Position numbers and translations under genes: made by a program
The notes under the pieces: model-generated
Told to the model about the DNA's origin: nothing
What the model saw: only the letters and a program-made list of their open reading frames with translations
Database searches by the model: none
In this document: positions 9,061 through 55,770 of the stretch, piece after piece
Position numbering within the stretch: the stretch's first letter is position 1
Layout: each line of letters opens with the position of its first letter
Virus record (IMG/VR): IMGVR_UViG_3300025770_001492
Coordinates: 181,523 to 245,522 of that record
Strand: one strand, 5' to 3'
DNA length: 64,000 nt

Positions 9061-9091
9061 AAAAAGCCCTTCAAAAATTGAAGGGCTTTTT
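9061..9091. terminator. Bidirectional intrinsic terminator
   Basis: aaaaagcccttc-aaaaatt-gaagggcttttt. Confidence 0.85.
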
Positions 9092-9163: not shown

Positions 9164-10762
9164 TTGAGTAAGTATATCATCGTAGCAGGCGGAGTAATTA
9201 GCGGAACTGGAAAAGGCGTATCCGCAGCATCAATTGGATTACTTCTCAAGCAAAGAGGACACACGGTTGAACTGATAAAGTTTGATCCTTATTTGAACAT
9301 TAATGCTGGAATTTTAGCTCCTCGTGAGCATGGCGAATGTTTTCTGTGCGACGACGGAACAGAAACAGATCTCGATTTGGGGCACTATGAAAGGATCGCA
9401 GGAGTCACAGTAGGGGCTGAAAACATATGCACAGCAGGAACGATATACAAAGAGTTAGTAGAAGAACAAGAGGATGGAAAATGGCTTGGACATACGATTC
9501 AAGTCATGCCTCATGTTACAGATAAGATATCTGAAAGACTTTTGAACTTGGGAAAAAAAGCGGATATCGTAATTGCCGAGATCGGCGGAACTGTTGGAGA
9601 TGTTGAATCTGATCCCTTCTTCAAGGCTGTAGCCAGATTCAAACAAAAGTATGAAAATGACTGCATGGTTGTCATGGTGTCTCCAATTTTGTGGGTTCCC
9701 ACAATCAAGGAGTTTAAAACAAAGCCTCTGCAAAGGTCTCTCATCGACCTCAAGTCTCACGGACTCAACCCAGACATGCTTTTGTGCAGAGTTGATAGGG
9801 ATGTGCCATCAGACATAATAAGAAAGGTATCTGACACCACCGGCGTGCCAATCCAAGCTGTTTTCGACGCACCAGATGTAAAAACAATATATCAGGTTCC
9901 AATTGAGTTTTATAATCGTGAAGTGGACGACATGATTGTAGATAAACTTCGTTTAAAACGAAAAGGTTGTAGAATAGGCCAGTATAGGAAGCTAGTTGAG
10001 AAAGCCAATAATCCAACTAATCGAAATATAACAATTGGAATATTTGGTAAATATGAGAATTGCGATGAGGCTTATATTTCTTTAAAAGAAGCGTTAATGC
10101 ATGCTGGCTTGGCACAAGATGTGAATGTCAACATCGAATGGATCAATTCTTCAGACTTAGAGGCGTGTAAAAATGTTAAAAAATATTTTAAGGATTTAGA
10201 TGGAATCATTGTGCCTGGCGGTTTCGATAAAAGAGGAGTAGAAGGAAAAATAAAAGCAATCAAGTATGCTCGTGAAAACAATGTTCCATTTCTTGGAATA
10301 TGTTTAGGTCTTCAATGTGCTGTAATTGAATATGCTAGAAATGTGATGGGGCTAAAGGGAGCAAGTAGTCTAGAATTTGATAAAAAGTGCGAGCACCCAG
10401 TTATCAACTATGTTGAAGGACAAGAAGATCTTAAGAAAAAGTCTGGAACCATGCGATTGGGAGCATATGATTGCGTTGTGACCGAAAATTCTGTTGCTCA
10501 TTCTCTGTATGGCAAGCAAACAATTAGCGAACGACACAGGCACAGATACGAAGTAAACAATGATTATATTAATGACTTGGAAAAACATGGGATGTTAGTA
10601 TCTGGAGTAAATCCAAAGAGTGGACTGGTTGAAATTGTTGAAATAACAGATCATAAATATTTTATAGCAACCCAAGCCCACCCAGAGTTTAAGAGTTCAA
10701 TTGTGAATCCTGCACCTTTGTTCAAAGGTCTTATTGATAACTGTTTAGCTTTTCGAGTATGA
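9164..10762 (+). CDS. pyrG: CTP synthase
   Basis: GGVISGTGKG, KFDPYLN, DLDLGHYER, EIGGTVGD, GICLGLQ nucleophile, ERHRHRYE, HPE. Confidence 0.97.
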   Translation: MSKYIIVAGGVISGTGKGVSAASIGLLLKQRGHTVELIKFDPYLNINAGILAPREHGECFLCDDGTETDLDLGHYERIAGVTVGAENICTAGTIYKELVEEQEDGKWLGHTIQVMPHVTDKISERLLNLGKKADIVIAEIGGTVGDVESDPFFKAVARFKQKYENDCMVVMVSPILWVPTIKEFKTKPLQRSLIDLKSHGLNPDMLLCRVDRDVPSDIIRKVSDTTGVPIQAVFDAPDVKTIYQVPIEFYNREVDDMIVDKLRLKRKGCRIGQYRKLVEKANNPTNRNITIGIFGKYENCDEAYISLKEALMHAGLAQDVNVNIEWINSSDLEACKNVKKYFKDLDGIIVPGGFDKRGVEGKIKAIKYARENNVPFLGICLGLQCAVIEYARNVMGLKGASSLEFDKKCEHPVINYVEGQEDLKKKSGTMRLGAYDCVVTENSVAHSLYGKQTISERHRHRYEVNNDYINDLEKHGMLVSGVNPKSGLVEIVEITDHKYFIATQAHPEFKSSIVNPAPLFKGLIDNCLAFRV

Positions 10763-11164: not shown

Positions 11165-11734
11165 ATGAAATTTAGAGAATTTTTACTAAACGAAGACAGC
11201 AAATATTTAAGTGAAAAAATAGGCGGTATTTTGAGCATATTGCACGCTACCCAAGAAGATAAAGACGGACTTGGGAGCAGAGACATTGAAACTTATGCAC
11301 AAAAAGTTATCAATCAAATAAAGCCAATTTTAAACATTTCAAAAGGATCGAAGGATGTGCAACGATCCCTTCAGAAAGTCGCAGTAGCAATATCAATTGC
11401 AATGGAAGAAAAAAAAGGAGACGAACTCTTGGACATTATGTCAAAATCTTCCCAAATTATAGAAAAATTGTTATCTGATATGGGAAGCCCGATTCAAGAT
11501 TTGGGAACCCCTCCTGAGGCCGGAAAGCCACAAGACCAAGATTCGGCACTTCAGCCTCCGATTGAACCAGAAACGCCAGAGCAGCCTCCTGTCGATCCCT
11601 CACAGCCTCAGCAACCTGCTCCTGTCGATCCCTCACAGCCTCAGCAACCTGCTCCTGTCGATCCCTCACAGCCTCAGCAACCTGCTCCTGTCGATCCAAG
11701 ACAAGCACAGCGGCTTTCTTTGCCACAAGGATAG
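11165..11734 (+). CDS. Hypothetical protein with capsid-targeting-like N-terminus and Pro/Gln tail
   Basis: MKFREFLLNED start; TATATA at 11135-11140. Confidence 0.7.
   Translation: MKFREFLLNEDSKYLSEKIGGILSILHATQEDKDGLGSRDIETYAQKVINQIKPILNISKGSKDVQRSLQKVAVAISIAMEEKKGDELLDIMSKSSQIIEKLLSDMGSPIQDLGTPPEAGKPQDQDSALQPPIEPETPEQPPVDPSQPQQPAPVDPSQPQQPAPVDPSQPQQPAPVDPRQAQRLSLPQG
11588..11697 (+). repeat. 33-nt coding tandem repeat (PVDPSQPQQPA), about 3.3 copies
   Basis: cctgtcgatccctcacagcctcagcaacctgct repeated. Confidence 0.9.
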
Positions 11735-11745
11735 AAATTCATAAC

Positions 11746-12177
11746 ATGATAAGTCACAAGCACCTAATGATAAGGGCAGAAGTCCAGAATCCCATAAAAA
11801 CCACTGAATCTGCATTTACTTGGATGGAGAAACTGGTTGATTCGATTGGGATGGTCATTTGCCCAAATGGAGGGCCTCATGTCCACTATGTAAATAAAGA
11901 AAACAACTGCGGCATTGCCGCAGTTGTTATGATTGAAACGAGCCATTGCAGTTTGCATGTTTGGGACAAGGCAGATCCGCCATTGGTTCAGTTTGATGTG
12001 TATTCTTGTTCAGATTATGAAGTTTCAAAGGTACTGGAGCTTTTGAATGAAATGAAACCTACGAAAGTGTGGTGGAAATTATTCAATAGAGAAAGTATAA
12101 TAAAAGAAGAAGATAATAGTTTTAAAGACTATGCCATCACACTCAAGTCAGATGACTGTTTGCGTGAATTATTTTAA
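11746..12177 (+). CDS. speD: Pyruvoyl-dependent S-adenosylmethionine decarboxylase-family proenzyme
   Basis: KHLMI, IAAVVMIETSHCSLHVW, QFDVYSC. Confidence 0.85.
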   Translation: MISHKHLMIRAEVQNPIKTTESAFTWMEKLVDSIGMVICPNGGPHVHYVNKENNCGIAAVVMIETSHCSLHVWDKADPPLVQFDVYSCSDYEVSKVLELLNEMKPTKVWWKLFNRESIIKEEDNSFKDYAITLKSDDCLRELF

Positions 12178-12191
12178 CTTGGAGGTGCATC

Positions 12192-13397
12192 ATTTGCGGC
12201 ATAAGCGGTTATATAGGACAAAGTAAGCATCCTGATATAACATATTCTCTAATTACAAATTTATTTAGTTGTATAGAATCCAGAGGTCGAGATGCTTCTG
12301 GCTTTTGGGGGGTTTCAAAAGATAGCGGAAAAATTCTATATCACAAAGAGCCAATTACTTCTAGCACGTTTATAAAAGGAGAAACTTGGAAAAAAATATC
12401 CAAGATGAATCCTGACATTCTTTTAACTCATGCGAGGGGTGCTTCAAAAGGTGTCGGTGCTCCATTTGTGAACTCCAACAATCATCCCTTCGTAAATAGC
12501 GACAAATCAATAGGTCTGATTCACAACGGCAGGGTGTCAGATTGCCAGTACAGAACTTTAAAAAAGAGGTATGAAGTATCCTCTGGTTGCGATTCAGAAA
12601 TATTGTTAAGAATATTTGAGCACGCACATTTGAATTCAAACAAGAATGATACTTCTGGGTTTATGAACATATGGTCACAAGTTCTTGAGGCCCACATGGC
12701 AATAGCAGTTGGAGAAAAGACGAGCAAGCACGAAAGAAGGTTGTGGATCTCAAGAAACGAGCATCGCCCTAATTGGGTTGTAGATTTAAGAAAGCAATTG
12801 GGGCAATTGTTTTTCGTATCTACCCCAGAAATATGGGCTGAAGCTGTAGACAATTGTTCTTTGTTGAAGAATTTTATAAAAAAATTTAAAATGGTAGAAC
12901 TCCCAACAGAAGAGATTTGGAGATTTAAATTATCAGAAAATAACAAGATAGATTTAAGTAAGTTTAAGGTTCATTTTGAAGGAACCGAAGAATGGGACCA
13001 CACAGAATCCCTTATTCCGATAGTTAAAAATACTGTTAATGATGAAATTTATTCAAACTTAGATGAATCAGAAAATGTTATAAAAAAATACAAACCCAAT
13101 CCAGTCAAATTAAACACAGAGTTAGACAGAAAAGTTGATCCTGTATTTTCCAGTCCTGAAAAGTGCGAAGAAATCGATTGTTTTTACAGTAATGGCATAT
13201 GCACGGACAAAGACGGTTTAGAAAGAATCTGCGACAGTATAAAATCAATTAAGTTTATGCTAGAAGATATAGAAACCCTTGCAGAAAACAAACTTATCGA
13301 GGGATCAATGGAAGAAAGTGAAATGCTTGAATTATTGTACGCACTGGAGTCAACTGGAGTCGATTTAAATGGGACTTTAAGAATTCTTAAGCAATAA
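12192..13397 (+). CDS. Class II (Ntn) glutamine amidotransferase-like protein; start extended to ATT
   Basis: In frame upstream of the track ORF: ATT-CGISGYIG...ESRGRDASG; HARGAS, NNHPF, HNG, DSE motifs; GGAGG at 12181; in-frame TGA at 12165. Confidence 0.8.
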   Translation: MCGISGYIGQSKHPDITYSLITNLFSCIESRGRDASGFWGVSKDSGKILYHKEPITSSTFIKGETWKKISKMNPDILLTHARGASKGVGAPFVNSNNHPFVNSDKSIGLIHNGRVSDCQYRTLKKRYEVSSGCDSEILLRIFEHAHLNSNKNDTSGFMNIWSQVLEAHMAIAVGEKTSKHERRLWISRNEHRPNWVVDLRKQLGQLFFVSTPEIWAEAVDNCSLLKNFIKKFKMVELPTEEIWRFKLSENNKIDLSKFKVHFEGTEEWDHTESLIPIVKNTVNDEIYSNLDESENVIKKYKPNPVKLNTELDRKVDPVFSSPEKCEEIDCFYSNGICTDKDGLERICDSIKSIKFMLEDIETLAENKLIEGSMEESEMLELLYALESTGVDLNGTLRILKQ

Positions 13398-13409
13398 CTC
13401 TATTATTTT

Positions 13410-13982
13410 ATGGACGACTATGAAATTGAACCAATTTGGGAAAATACAAAGCCTAAGAAAATAAAAACAGGGCAAAAAGGGAAAAGGGTTGAAAGAGAGC
13501 TTTGCAAGGCTTTGAATAAGAGATTTGCAAAACTAATTTCCGAAAATCCATCTTGGGGTCAGTTTTCTCGATCTATTGGATCAGGGAATCGATGGGGTCA
13601 AGTGTCCAATCTTCCAAAGCATGCTAAAGATACTTTTTCTGGTGACATAACCTGTCCAGAGAATTTCAAGTTCACAATAGAATCTAAAGGCGGCTATAAC
13701 GATATTGACCTCAATTCCGCTTTTGACAAAGGTCACAAAGAACTAGACACCTTCTTGCAGCAGGCATTGGATGATTCGGAGAGATCTGGAAGGCATCCTA
13801 TGCTTGTGTGGAAAAAAGATAGAAAGCCAAGACTTGTCTTTGTTGAGAGAGACGTAGTAGAATCAGAGTTGACATCTAAACAGATAGTTGCTTCTGATTA
13901 CGTTTTGATTTATAGAGATTGGGTGGCTTTTAATTTAGATAAACTCTTAGGCTTTGATGACAAATTCTTTTTTGATTTTTAA
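13410..13982 (+). CDS. PD-(D/E)XK nuclease, Holliday junction resolvase-like
   Basis: KGKRVERE, GDI, IESK. Confidence 0.75.
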   Translation: MDDYEIEPIWENTKPKKIKTGQKGKRVERELCKALNKRFAKLISENPSWGQFSRSIGSGNRWGQVSNLPKHAKDTFSGDITCPENFKFTIESKGGYNDIDLNSAFDKGHKELDTFLQQALDDSERSGRHPMLVWKKDRKPRLVFVERDVVESELTSKQIVASDYVLIYRDWVAFNLDKLLGFDDKFFFDF

Positions 13983-40986: not shown

Positions 40987-41427
40987 CTAATCGATAATGA
41001 TTTCTACGCCATCCATCGGATCTTCATTTAAGAGAACATCTTCTTGAGAATCTTGGACAGGCTGTCCTTCATTGAGTTTTTTTTCGGTTTCGTCCACCAC
41101 AACCTGCTCTACAGTTCCTTCGGTAGTCACCACATCTGGTTGGTCCATGATTAATTTGTCGGTCATTTTATCTTTCCTTTCTGGATGCGAAATTGTTTTA
41201 ACCAAGCGAGCTTCATTCTTTTTTACCAACAGCATGAAGTAATTGTCGCCTCGCCATTCTCCGTTTACAGGAACACGTCTTGCTCCATCAAAGGATGCTT
41301 TTGGGAGATCAAGTGTCCCTTTTGTGTTATTTCTATATAGATACTCGCCGTCACCTCTTAAGGCGTGTTCTAGCTTTTTTTTTCTAGCGGCTTTAGCCTC
41401 ATATTGATTTTTAAGTTTTCTTTTCAT
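40987..41427 (-). CDS. Hypothetical protein
   Basis: 146-aa ORF with acidic C-terminus. Confidence 0.6.
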   Translation of the reverse strand: MKRKLKNQYEAKAARKKKLEHALRGDGEYLYRNNTKGTLDLPKASFDGARRVPVNGEWRGDNYFMLLVKKNEARLVKTISHPERKDKMTDKLIMDQPDVVTTEGTVEQVVVDETEKKLNEGQPVQDSQEDVLLNEDPMDGVEIIID

Positions 41428-41535
41428 TCTTCATTCTCTCTTTCTGTGAATTCTTGTTCAAAAATTCTATTTACTTATTCTTTTAATGTAGTTAGAATTC
41501 AAACTTATTTAGAAGATTTCAAGGATAATGGAAAA

Positions 41536-55146: not shown

Positions 55147-55770
55147 ATGTTTATGCTTAGATTTACACTTTTTTTATTCATGTTCTTTGTGTCTACGAAC
55201 GCAAGCGGGCAGATTATAATTATAAACCCAAATGAATCCGTTAATAAAGTCATTCAAGAGGCACCAAAACCTTTAGTTAAGCACTTTGGCGAAGCTTTAA
55301 AGCAGTACGAAAATTGGGTAAACAATGTCTCGAATGAAGAAGTTTATAAGAGTTTAAAAATCAGGGACAGAACCACTGGAGAAATAGTAGATTTTAAGGA
55401 CCTATCTGATCTTAAAAAGGACTTATTCTACCTTTGGCAATCTGAGCTTTGTGGAAATAAAATGTCCTCTTTAGAATCAAAGTGGTTTAACTCTTATAAT
55501 AACGCAGAGGATTTGTCAGAAGAAGGAGAAGGAGAAGGAGAAGGAGAAGGAGAAGATCTGAATCGTCTTGCAAACAAAAAAGATATATCAAAGTATGGAA
55601 AATCTCTTAGGACATTAAGAGAAAAGCATGCAAAAAATTATGAAAATCTAATTAAGAAAATTTTTGAAAAACATAAAGATGTAATTCCTGAAAAAGATCA
55701 AGAAGCTTATTTGAAAAGAATACAAGATTGGAATTCTAAAGAAAAATTAATCAAAGAGGAAAATAGATGA
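55147..55770 (+). CDS. Secreted/membrane-anchored hypothetical protein with (EG)5 tract
   Basis: Signal-peptide-like N-terminus; gaagga repeat at 55522-55554. Confidence 0.6.
   Translation: MFMLRFTLFLFMFFVSTNASGQIIIINPNESVNKVIQEAPKPLVKHFGEALKQYENWVNNVSNEEVYKSLKIRDRTTGEIVDFKDLSDLKKDLFYLWQSELCGNKMSSLESKWFNSYNNAEDLSEEGEGEGEGEGEDLNRLANKKDISKYGKSLRTLREKHAKNYENLIKKIFEKHKDVIPEKDQEAYLKRIQDWNSKEKLIKEENR

What the first reader, a model, noticed from the sequence alone, without database searches (positions are those of the whole stretch)
12181..12410. Ntn amidotransferase that can only initiate at ATT
Seen: GGAGG (12181-85), 6 nt, then ATT-TGC-GGC-ATA-AGC-GGT (CGISG), in frame with the 12405 ORF. An in-frame TGA lies at 12165 and there is no ATG/GTG/TTG before the Cys. 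Known: class II GATases need Cys at mature position 1, and AUU starts (infC) are discriminated by IF3. Inference: translation is tuned to IF3 level or deliberately low. The ORF track missed 71 codons containing the catalytic residue.
Basis: partly seen in the sequence, partly recalled or inferred. Interest (0 to 1): 0.6.

Follow-up and report, generated by a model that had tools for sequence, protein, structure and literature searches.

The report
Phage glutaminase gene starting at ATT
A gene for a cysteine-dependent glutaminase-type enzyme in a very large uncultured phage really does start at the rare codon ATT, as do about a third of its relatives, always behind an unusually strong ribosome-binding site, so standard gene callers cut off its catalytic cysteine.

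Summary
GGAGGTG (12181-12187), a 4-nt gap, ATT (12192), then the Cys codon (12195) open a 401-codon frame. It has an in-frame TGA at 12165 and no ATG/GTG/TTG before the cysteine.

The ATT is neither an assembly error nor a private lesion:
- Two independent IMG/VR assemblies are identical here.
- Four relatives (72-92% identity) keep ATT-TGC while the spacer varies.
- The 70 codons that gene callers drop are under strong purifying selection (pN/pS 0.07-0.23).

Across 70 distinct family members from phage contigs, the codon before the catalytic Cys is ATG 37, ATT 19, ATC 3, GTG 7, TTG 4. ATT arose or was lost at least six times. It comes with a gene-specific extended Shine-Dalgarno (median -10.1 vs -5.7 kcal/mol). 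Flanking cassette genes never need ATT.

The protein is a complete class II (Ntn) glutaminase domain plus a helical tail. No synthase domain was found.

The same roughly 500-kb-class phage encodes its own IF3, type I methionine aminopeptidase and a deformylase-like protein.

That the ATT makes expression low, coupled or IF3-sensitive is inferred, not shown. This is a new member of the known AUU-start kind.

The parts
12181..12187 (+). Extended Shine-Dalgarno GGAGGTG, 4 nt before the ATT (6 nt counted from the GGAGG core)
   Evidence: It is invariant in 7 aligned sequences. Its duplex with the 16S tail is -12.9 kcal/mol, stronger than that of 99.5% of 209 ORFs of at least 150 aa in the genome (median -4.0).
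12192..12194 (+). ATT initiation codon (inferred start)
   Evidence: It is the only possible start before the Cys. It is invariant in relatives while the spacer and codon -2 vary.
12195..12197 (+). TGC, the catalytic nucleophile Cys (residue 2 of the primary product, residue 1 after Met removal)
   Evidence: It aligns to Cys1 of PurF/GlmS chains and to profile position 1-2 of PHROG models. It is an invariant column in alignment A2.
12192..13397 (+). Full CDS, 401 codons plus TAA (protein P0002)
   Evidence: Homologues cover residues 1-401.
12195..12971 (+). Class II (Ntn) glutaminase domain, residues 2 to about 260, with invariant R31-G32, H80/R82, H111-N112-G113 and D134-S135-E136
   Evidence: Pfam GATase_6. 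AF2 model with pLDDT 86.6. Foldseek matches to GlmS/GFAT/PurF at E about 1e-12. Invariant columns.
13098..13202 (+). Low-confidence, variable linker (residues 303-337)
   Evidence: pLDDT below 50. Length and sequence vary across the family.
13206..13391 (+). C-terminal helical hairpin (residues 339-400), conserved, function unknown
   Evidence: Helices 339-369 and 375-400 with pLDDT about 90. There is a conserved C-terminal consensus in A2.
12405..12407 (+). First in-frame ATG, the start miscalled by ORF finders (gives 330 aa without the nucleophile)
   Evidence: P0003. The nearest AAGGAG lies 23 nt upstream, too far to serve as an SD. The 70 codons before this ATG have pN/pS 0.07-0.23.
12165..12167 (+). 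In-frame TGA that closes the frame upstream
11746..12177 (+). Upstream AdoMetDC-like ORF. Its TAA (12175-12177) ends 14 nt before the ATT, a stop-SD-start arrangement that suggests translational coupling
   Evidence: Pfam AdoMet_dc. In ATT/ATC loci the upstream stop lies mostly 10-16 nt before the start.
12194..12226 (+). Out-of-frame TTG that overlaps ATT-TGC and opens a 10-codon frame ending at TAA. It is a possible competing initiation site
   Evidence: Read. Any ATT-TGY junction creates such a TTG. Not tested.
11165..11734 (+). Conserved cassette partner: helical protein of about 180 aa with a Pro-rich tail, family unknown
   Evidence: It lies next to the GATase in 63 of 66 loci. Alignment A3. 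No family or structure match.
13410..13982 (+). Conserved cassette partner: PDDEXK_15 nuclease-like protein
   Evidence: Pfam PF24608. It lies downstream of the GATase in 63 of 66 loci.
9164..10762 (+). CTP synthase (PyrG-like), first gene of the likely operon, preceded by a bidirectional terminator-like hairpin at 9061-9091
   Evidence: Pfam. Terminator scan. Present in 43 of 66 loci.

Best explanation
The gene at 12192-13397 encodes a functional class II (N-terminal-nucleophile) glutaminase-type enzyme, and its translation starts at ATT 12192. Initiator fMet-tRNA reads this near-cognate AUU. An extended, near-perfect Shine-Dalgarno (GGAGGTG, 4 nt upstream) holds the ribosome there. Ribosomes that terminate 14 nt upstream on the preceding ORF probably also feed the site. 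Deformylase and methionine aminopeptidase then remove fMet and expose Cys1 as nucleophile; both host and phage copies exist. Shown here: ATT is the only possible start, it is conserved, the N-terminal codons are under purifying selection, the catalytic set is complete, and a strong gene-specific SD accompanies ATT/ATC throughout the family. Inferred: the weak, IF3-proofread codon combined with a strong SD gives an output that is limited, or that depends on IF3 level, host physiology and upstream translation. This would suit a stand-alone glutaminase that could waste glutamine. The confidence given is for the core claim (a real, selected ATT start of a functional Ntn enzyme). The regulatory purpose alone I would put near 0.5.
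For: Sequence and frame. Independent assemblies are identical, and four relatives at 72-92% aa identity keep GGAGGTG-N4-ATT-TGC while the spacer varies (GCATC, GCGTT, GTACC). In the family survey the codon before Cys is only ever ATG, GTG, TTG, ATT or ATC. In ATT loci the in-frame stop is often just 3 codons upstream, and codon -2 varies (GTT, ACC, CAT, TAT, CTT, TTT, AAT) while ATT stays fixed. On the tree ATT/ATC needs at least 6 changes on well-supported branches, and ATT persists through deep clades. pN/pS is 0.07-0.23 over the 70 codons upstream of the first ATG, with synonymous sites near saturation against L004. SD strength: ATT/ATC median -10.1 vs ATG -5.7 kcal/mol (Mann-Whitney p = 3e-9). 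The 2x2 table of start type against SD strength is 20/2/2/46. In ATT loci the GATase SD is far stronger than that of its own flanking genes (Wilcoxon p = 2e-4). Here the SD lies in the top 0.5% of the genome. Flanking cassette genes start with ATG in 54/64 and 59/63 loci and never need ATT. Fold and catalytic residues. The initiation region is unstructured (z = +0.77). The same genome holds a type I MetAP (309.7 bits), IF3 (175.7 bits) and a PDF-like gene. Published behaviour of AUU starts: 6-8-fold below AUG in a reporter, with the infC junction using both reinitiation and de novo initiation (PMC3592434). AUU mRNAs compete poorly, most of all at low temperature, under nutrient limitation and with ppGpp, and AUU/AUC of infC are the target of IF3 autoregulation (PMC5499595).
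Against: The host is unknown, so AUU efficiency and SD use in it are unknown. An out-of-frame TTG (12194) sits at equally good SD spacing and could compete. Near-sister phages differ in ATT vs ATG (L016/L032), so the codon flips easily and could be nearly neutral. The regulatory purpose is untested, and the very strong SD may restore substantial expression. The link to phage IF3 is statistically weak (see the rival explanations and the novel case).
Confidence: 0.85

Rival explanations
1. ATT is the real start but has no regulatory meaning. Because the gene is translated mainly by ribosomes reinitiating from the upstream ORF and carries a strong SD, start-codon identity is nearly neutral and drifts between ATG, GTG, TTG and ATT.
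For: The upstream stop lies 0-16 nt from the start in most loci of all start types. There are at least 6 switches on the tree, including the near-sister pair L016 (ATT) and L032 (ATG). Reporter work shows that reinitiation contributes about half of second-cistron translation at close junctions, including the infC AUU junction (PMC3592434).
Against: The two flanking genes are just as tightly packed yet never use ATT/ATC (0 of 127). ATT is nearly always accompanied by a gene-specific extended SD, which indicates selection on output. ATT is retained through deep clades with saturated synonymous sites.
Confidence: 0.25
2. The true product starts at ATG 12405 (330 aa) and lacks the nucleophile. The upstream 71 codons are an untranslated remnant, i.e. 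a decaying or neofunctionalised gene.
For: This is what ORF finders and public gene calls give.
Against: pN/pS is 0.07-0.23 over those codons. They hold invariant family residues C2, G3, R31, G32 and D34. There is no SD at a functional distance before 12405. The fold needs strand 3-8 and helix 14-30.
Confidence: 0.02
3. Sequencing or assembly error, or a private lesion: the real codon is ATG.
For: None found. Raw reads could not be examined.
Against: Three assemblies are identical (window, L005, L006), and L001-L004 from other samples also carry ATT. A further 15 distinct ATT and 3 ATC members occur elsewhere in the family.
Confidence: 0.01
4. Translation starts further upstream or in another frame (a propeptide removed autocatalytically as in B. 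subtilis PurF, or a frameshift fusion with the upstream ORF).
For: Some gene calls of distant relatives extend upstream (P0007, P0014, P0053, P0077). Ntn enzymes with propeptides are known (established knowledge).
Against: Here an in-frame TGA lies 9 codons upstream with no canonical start between. In many relatives the stop is 3 codons upstream. The upstream gene differs between relatives: AdoMetDC-like here and in L002, others in L001 and L004. So no conserved fusion is possible.
Confidence: 0.02

Closest known systems
infC (IF3) AUU/AUC start codon of bacteria
   Same: A near-cognate AUU/AUC start that is conserved across orthologues, lies close behind the stop of an upstream cistron and is served by an SD. 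Such codons are proofread by IF3 (PMC5499595; PMC3592434).
   Different: The gene product is not IF3, so there is no autoregulatory loop by itself. The trait is polymorphic in the family (about 30% ATT/ATC), not near-universal. It is paired with an extended 7-8 nt SD. It occurs in phages that encode their own, ATG-started IF3.
E. coli pcnB (poly(A) polymerase) AUU start
   Same: AUU is used at a gene whose over-expression is harmful, to limit translation (Binns & Masters 2002, cited in PMC3592434). The best guess for a stand-alone glutaminase is the same.
   Different: Harm from over-expression is only presumed here. The phage, operon and coupled context differs.
Glutaminase domains of PurF, GlmS/GFAT and AsnB (class II, Ntn amidotransferases)
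   Same: The fold is the same (Foldseek E about 1e-12). So are the N-terminal Cys and the R-G, H-x-R, H-N-G and D-S-E motifs.
   Different: Identity is only 15-20%. There is no synthase/acceptor domain. Instead there is a variable linker and a conserved helical hairpin. The family is virus-restricted and sits in a helical-protein / GATase / PDDEXK cassette.
Translation genes of huge phages (IF1, IF3, PDF, tmRNA, ribosomal proteins)
   Same: This genome also carries IF3, a PDF-like gene, tmRNA and tRNAs, as described for huge phages (PMC7162821; PMC7824862).
   Different: Those papers do not connect phage IF3 with non-canonical start codons. Neither term search found such a link.

Membership tests
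Class II (Ntn, PurF-type) glutamine amidotransferase | Cys is the first residue of the mature protein (nucleophile with a free alpha-amine) | tested here: met
   Cys is codon 2, directly after the only possible start. It aligns to Cys1 of PurF/GlmS chains. Actual removal of fMet cannot be tested here. MetAP accepts Met-Cys (established knowledge), and the phage encodes a type I MetAP.
Class II (Ntn, PurF-type) glutamine amidotransferase | Ntn four-layer alpha-beta-beta-alpha fold | tested here: met
   AF2 model with pLDDT 86.6. The top 50 Foldseek hits are all GlmS/GFAT/PurF glutaminase domains, at probability 1.00.
Class II (Ntn, PurF-type) glutamine amidotransferase | Glutamine-binding and oxyanion residues (the R-G after helix 1, the H-x-R arginine, Asn-Gly, and the Asp of D-S-E) | tested here: met
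   R31, G32, H80, R82, N112, G113, D134, S135 and E136 are invariant in 35 sequences. They are aligned to the matching PurF motifs.
Class II (Ntn, PurF-type) glutamine amidotransferase | A fused or partnered acceptor (synthase) domain that receives the ammonia | tested here: not met
   Only GATase_6/7 are found. The C-terminus is a linker plus a helical hairpin. The co-fold with the conserved neighbour gave no answer. Hence 'glutaminase-type Ntn hydrolase' is shown, 'amidotransferase' is not.
AUU-initiated, IF3-discriminated genes (infC / pcnB type) | AUU/AUC at the only possible initiation site, with no canonical alternative in frame | tested here: met
AUU-initiated, IF3-discriminated genes (infC / pcnB type) | The non-canonical start is conserved among orthologues | tested here: met
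   All 7 sequences of the window's clade carry it. So do 22 of 70 distinct family members, in several clades.
AUU-initiated, IF3-discriminated genes (infC / pcnB type) | Shine-Dalgarno at functional spacing | tested here: met
   GGAGGTG lies 4 nt upstream, at -12.9 kcal/mol.
AUU-initiated, IF3-discriminated genes (infC / pcnB type) | Expression changes with IF3 level | not testable with these tools
   Needs a reporter with IF3 (host and phage) dosage.
AUU-initiated, IF3-discriminated genes (infC / pcnB type) | Protein N-terminus or initiating ribosome mapped to the AUU | not testable with these tools
No proteomics is available.
Ntn enzymes made with a propeptide (B. subtilis PurF type) | An in-frame canonical start upstream of the Cys that gives a cleavable leader | tested here: not met
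   TGA lies 9 codons upstream with no ATG/GTG/TTG between. The stop is 3 codons upstream in many relatives.

The most novel reading that the evidence does not exclude
The phage-encoded IF3 starts at ATG, so it lies outside the AUU autoregulation of host infC. It could set start-codon stringency during infection, and ATT/ATC-initiated phage genes such as this glutaminase would form a small regulon timed by it. This would be a translational counterpart of a phage sigma factor. Expression would be either shut off as phage IF3 accumulates or enabled if the phage factor is permissive. All four ATT-type contigs of at least 200 kb carry IF3, against 3 of 9 with canonical starts. That gives one-sided Fisher p of about 0.05, by my arithmetic, without correction for phylogeny or contig incompleteness.
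Probability: 0.12. Interest if true: 0.85.

Novelty: new member of a known kind. Interest (0 to 1): 0.6.

Why it matters
1. Annotation. In about 30% of this virus-specific enzyme family, including every close relative of this gene in the public protein collection, gene callers delete or bury the catalytic cysteine. The proteins therefore look like inactive fragments.

2. Biology of initiation. Conserved AUU starts are textbook rarities (infC, pcnB). Here one recurs at least six times within one gene family. Each time it comes with a compensating extended Shine-Dalgarno, while the neighbouring genes keep ATG. This is a natural replicated experiment on the trade-off between start codon and SD.

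3. Testability. It occurs in huge phages that carry their own IF3, methionine aminopeptidase and deformylase-like genes. This gives a concrete, testable handle on what phage-encoded initiation factors do.

Tried and rejected
Independent assemblies were used instead.
- Cultured-phage relatives: blastn found none. tblastn found only two weak hits of 26-30% identity.
- GTDB genomes: only 7 MAG contigs, which look like mis-binned phage. They give no host clue.
- Special initiator tRNA: the only phage tRNA(CAT) has a paired 1-72 and lacks the three G-C pairs of initiators. Only 49% of the genome is in hand.
- Other ATT starts in the genome: a crude screen (long coding leader plus SD plus ATT/ATC/ATA/CTG) found no second convincing case. 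The extended motif GAGGTG-N4-ATT-TGY is unique in the 245 kb.
- RNA elements: no Rfam family in the window. The start region folds no better than shuffles.
- Binding of the GATase to the conserved upstream helical protein: complex prediction gave 'no answer' (score 0.00), which is evidence neither for nor against.
- Family of the helical neighbour: no PHROG or PDB relative beyond designed helical bundles.
- IF3 co-occurrence with ATT: 4/4 vs 3/9 for contigs of at least 200 kb, and 4/5 vs 5/17 for at least 100 kb. This is not significant once incompleteness and phylogeny are considered.
- MetAP co-occurrence: present in 6 of 21 large contigs, with no relation to ATT.
- Phylogenetically independent pairs for ATT vs strong SD: only 4 pairs on supported branches. 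All point in the expected direction, but p = 0.125.
- Literature: no paper was found linking AUU starts with phage or Ntn amidotransferases.

Full report
**1. The observation.**
GGAGG lies at 12181-12185 and extends to GGAGGTG at 12187. It is followed by ATT 12192-12194, TGC 12195-12197, then GGC ATA AGC GGT. This is in frame with the ORF that the mechanical ORF list starts at ATG 12405.

An in-frame TGA lies at 12165. The nine codons between it and the Cys contain no ATG, GTG or TTG. Read from the ATT, the frame gives a 401-residue protein, P0002. The ORF track had dropped 71 codons. The bare motif is not statistically remarkable: it occurs once in the window, and 11 of 100 shuffles also have one. 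The case therefore rests on comparison with relatives.

**2. It is not an error or a private lesion.**
The window belongs to a 245.5-kb IMG/VR virus record. CheckV rates it 49% complete, which puts it in a roughly 500-kb class of phage. Two other IMG/VR contigs from different metagenomes are identical over the locus, ATT included.

The four closest relatives in the public protein collection (92, 86 and 72% identity) are all called as N-terminally truncated proteins of 330-359 aa. Their DNA shows why. Each has GGAGGTG, a 4-nt spacer that differs between them, then ATT-TGC-GGY-ATA-AGC.

The 70 codons between the Cys and the first ATG have pN/pS of 0.07-0.23 against four relatives. At 73% synonymous divergence, 63 of 70 residues are still identical. 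This stretch is therefore translated.

**3. A family-wide trait.**
An alignment of 35 homologues (A2) retrieved 80 loci from IMG/VR. The codon directly before the catalytic Cys is only ever ATG, GTG, TTG, ATT or ATC.
- Raw counts are ATG 41, ATT 21, GTG 7, TTG 5 and ATC 3.
- After removing duplicates and adding the window's clade there are 70 distinct members: ATG 37, ATT 19, ATC 3, GTG 7 and TTG 4.

In ATT/ATC loci there is no canonical start upstream. The in-frame stop is often only three codons away, as the TGA inside GGTGA. Codon -2 varies freely while ATT is fixed.

On a maximum-likelihood tree, ATT needs nine changes, at least six of them forced by well-supported branches. It also persists through deep clades. 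L016 (ATT) and L032 (ATG) are near-sisters.

**4. ATT comes with a gene-specific strong SD.**
- The predicted duplex of the 20 nt upstream with the 16S tail has a median of -10.1 kcal/mol for ATT and -14.2 for ATC, against -5.7 for ATG (Mann-Whitney p = 3e-9).
- The 2x2 table is ATT/ATC with strong SD 20, ATT/ATC with weak SD 2, canonical with strong SD 2, and canonical with weak SD 46.
- Only four phylogenetically independent contrasts exist. None goes the wrong way, but p = 0.125.
- This is not a lineage habit. In ATT loci the flanking genes have essentially no SD (median +0.25), against -10.1 for the GATase (Wilcoxon p = 2e-4).
- In the window's own genome the GATase SD (-12.9) beats 99.5% of 209 long ORFs.
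- The flanking cassette genes start with ATG in 54/64 and 59/63 loci. Their leaders are short (median 3-5 codons) and they never need ATT.
- The GATase is therefore singled out for weak starts: 47% non-ATG.
- The upstream ORF usually stops 10-16 nt before the ATT (14 nt here). In many ATG loci the stop and start overlap. This fits coupled translation in a polycistronic unit that here runs from a terminator-like hairpin at 9061-9091 to about 13982.
- The start region has no notable RNA structure.

**5. What the protein is.**
Pfam gives GATase_6. PHROG models match from their first position. A profile of the family aligns its Cys to Cys1 of E. coli PurF and GlmS, together with the R-G, H-x-R, H-N-G and D-S-E motifs. 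All of these are invariant in the family.

The AlphaFold model (pLDDT 86.6) has three parts: an Ntn glutaminase domain (residues 2 to about 260), a disordered variable linker (303-337) and a confident helical hairpin (339-400). Foldseek returns only GlmS/GFAT/PurF glutaminase domains.

No acceptor domain is present, so 'glutaminase-type Ntn hydrolase' is what is shown. The family is virus-restricted, has no cultured-phage relative and appears in GTDB only on MAG contigs that look like phage.

In 63 of 66 loci it sits between a helical protein of about 180 aa with a Pro-rich tail and a PDDEXK_15 nuclease-like protein, often downstream of CTP synthase. The helical neighbour has no recognisable family. 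The co-fold with it gave no answer.

**6. Mechanism.**
The following are shown here:
- The only route to the essential Cys is initiation at ATT.
- The codon and a matching extended SD are maintained by selection.

The following come from established knowledge and the literature:
- AUU is read by initiator tRNA with a third-position mismatch and is proofread by IF3.
- It gave 6-8-fold less reporter than AUG in a standard context.
- At the infC junction, reinitiation and de novo initiation contribute about equally (PMC3592434).
- AUU mRNAs compete poorly, most of all at low temperature, under nutrient limitation and with ppGpp (PMC5499595).

The following is inference. The strong SD keeps ribosomes, including those terminating upstream, on the site long enough for the weak codon to be accepted. 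The resulting output is limited and depends on IF3 and on host state. fMet is then removed to free Cys1.

The same genome encodes a full-length IF3 with an ATG start (TIGR00168, 175.7 bits; it aligns end to end with solved IF3s), a type I methionine aminopeptidase (TIGR00500, 309.7 bits) and a deformylase-like protein.

Phage IF3 is known from huge phages (PMC7162821; PMC7824862), but it has not been linked to start-codon choice. Its co-occurrence with ATT here is suggestive only: 4/4 vs 3/9 among contigs of at least 200 kb. MetAP shows no such relation.

**7. Rivals.**
- A truncated product from ATG 12405, an assembly error, and an upstream start with a propeptide or a frameshift fusion are each contradicted by the data above.
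- The serious rival is that ATT is real but nearly neutral under translational coupling.
- Against that rival stand the absence of ATT in the equally coupled neighbours and the consistent SD compensation.
- An out-of-frame TTG at 12194, inherent to any ATT-TGY junction, may compete for initiation. This was not tested.

**8. Verdict.**
The reading 'can only initiate at ATT' is supported. 'Amidotransferase' and 'tuned to IF3 or deliberately low' remain unproven.

This is a new, well-replicated member of the known class of AUU-initiated genes. It has practical consequences for phage annotation and offers a testable link to phage-encoded IF3.

Noticed in passing
G000:C1:91425-92033 (- strand; outside the window; = L089:10926-11474): The phage encodes a full-length translation initiation factor IF3 (182 aa, TIGR00168 175.7 bits; it aligns end to end with solved IF3 structures). 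It starts at ATG, not at the AUU typical of bacterial infC.
   Followed up: partly
G000:C1:81868-82626 (+; = L089:1369-2127) and G000:C1:98877-99272 (-): Phage-encoded type I methionine aminopeptidase (TIGR00500 309.7 bits, GTG start) and a peptide-deformylase-like gene (above the Pfam cut-off, below the NCBIfam cut-off). These are the two enzymes needed to unmask an N-terminal Cys. MetAP-like genes occur in 6 of 21 other large contigs of the group.
   Followed up: partly
G000:C1:111581-111937 (-), and tRNAs at 41371-41445, 55258-55613 and 177186-177260: A phage tmRNA gene (tag DKTNFAMAA) and six tRNAs. The tRNA(CAT) is not initiator-like and could be an elongator Met or an Ile2 tRNA.
   Followed up: partly
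G000:C1:85500-94000 (L089 5026-13114): Unusual auxiliary genes lie next to infC: a DnaJ-like chaperone, a nucleotide-sugar dehydrogenase, an aldehyde dehydrogenase and a TPP-dependent indolepyruvate/phenylpyruvate-decarboxylase-like protein (all below the equivalog cut-offs).
   Followed up: no
window 11746-12177: An AdoMetDC-like (pyruvoyl decarboxylase family) gene is inserted between the helical protein and the GATase in this lineage and in L002/L003. It is absent in L001, L004 and most family loci. Even so, the stop-to-ATT distance of about 14 nt is kept.
   Followed up: partly
window 11902-11928: A perfect 12-bp inverted repeat with a 3-nt loop (G+C-rich) lies inside the AdoMetDC-like coding region. 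It was scored as a terminator-like site on the - strand.
   Followed up: no
window 11165-11734 and 13410-13982; L009-L087: A three-gene cassette is strongly conserved (63 of 66 loci): a helical protein with a Pro-rich tail, the Ntn glutaminase, and a PDDEXK_15 nuclease-like protein. It is often preceded by CTP synthase and ribonucleotide reductase. Its joint function is unknown.
   Followed up: partly
window 12194-12226: An out-of-frame TTG overlaps ATT-TGC at good SD spacing and opens a 10-codon frame. The stop of that frame is conserved in close relatives because it overlaps the conserved Ser-Lys codons.
   Followed up: no
Public protein models P0003-P0008, P0014, P0053, P0061, P0077, P0109 and about ten other truncated models: Roughly one in six of the 120 best database homologues is either truncated behind the Cys or extended upstream through an Ile-Cys junction. 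This is the footprint of ATT/ATC starts in automatic gene calls.
   Followed up: partly
window 9164: The mechanical ORF for CTP synthase starts at TTG 9164. In family loci the conserved N-terminus (Met-Ser-Cys-Lys-Tyr-Ile) follows an ATG, so the true start here was not checked.
   Followed up: no
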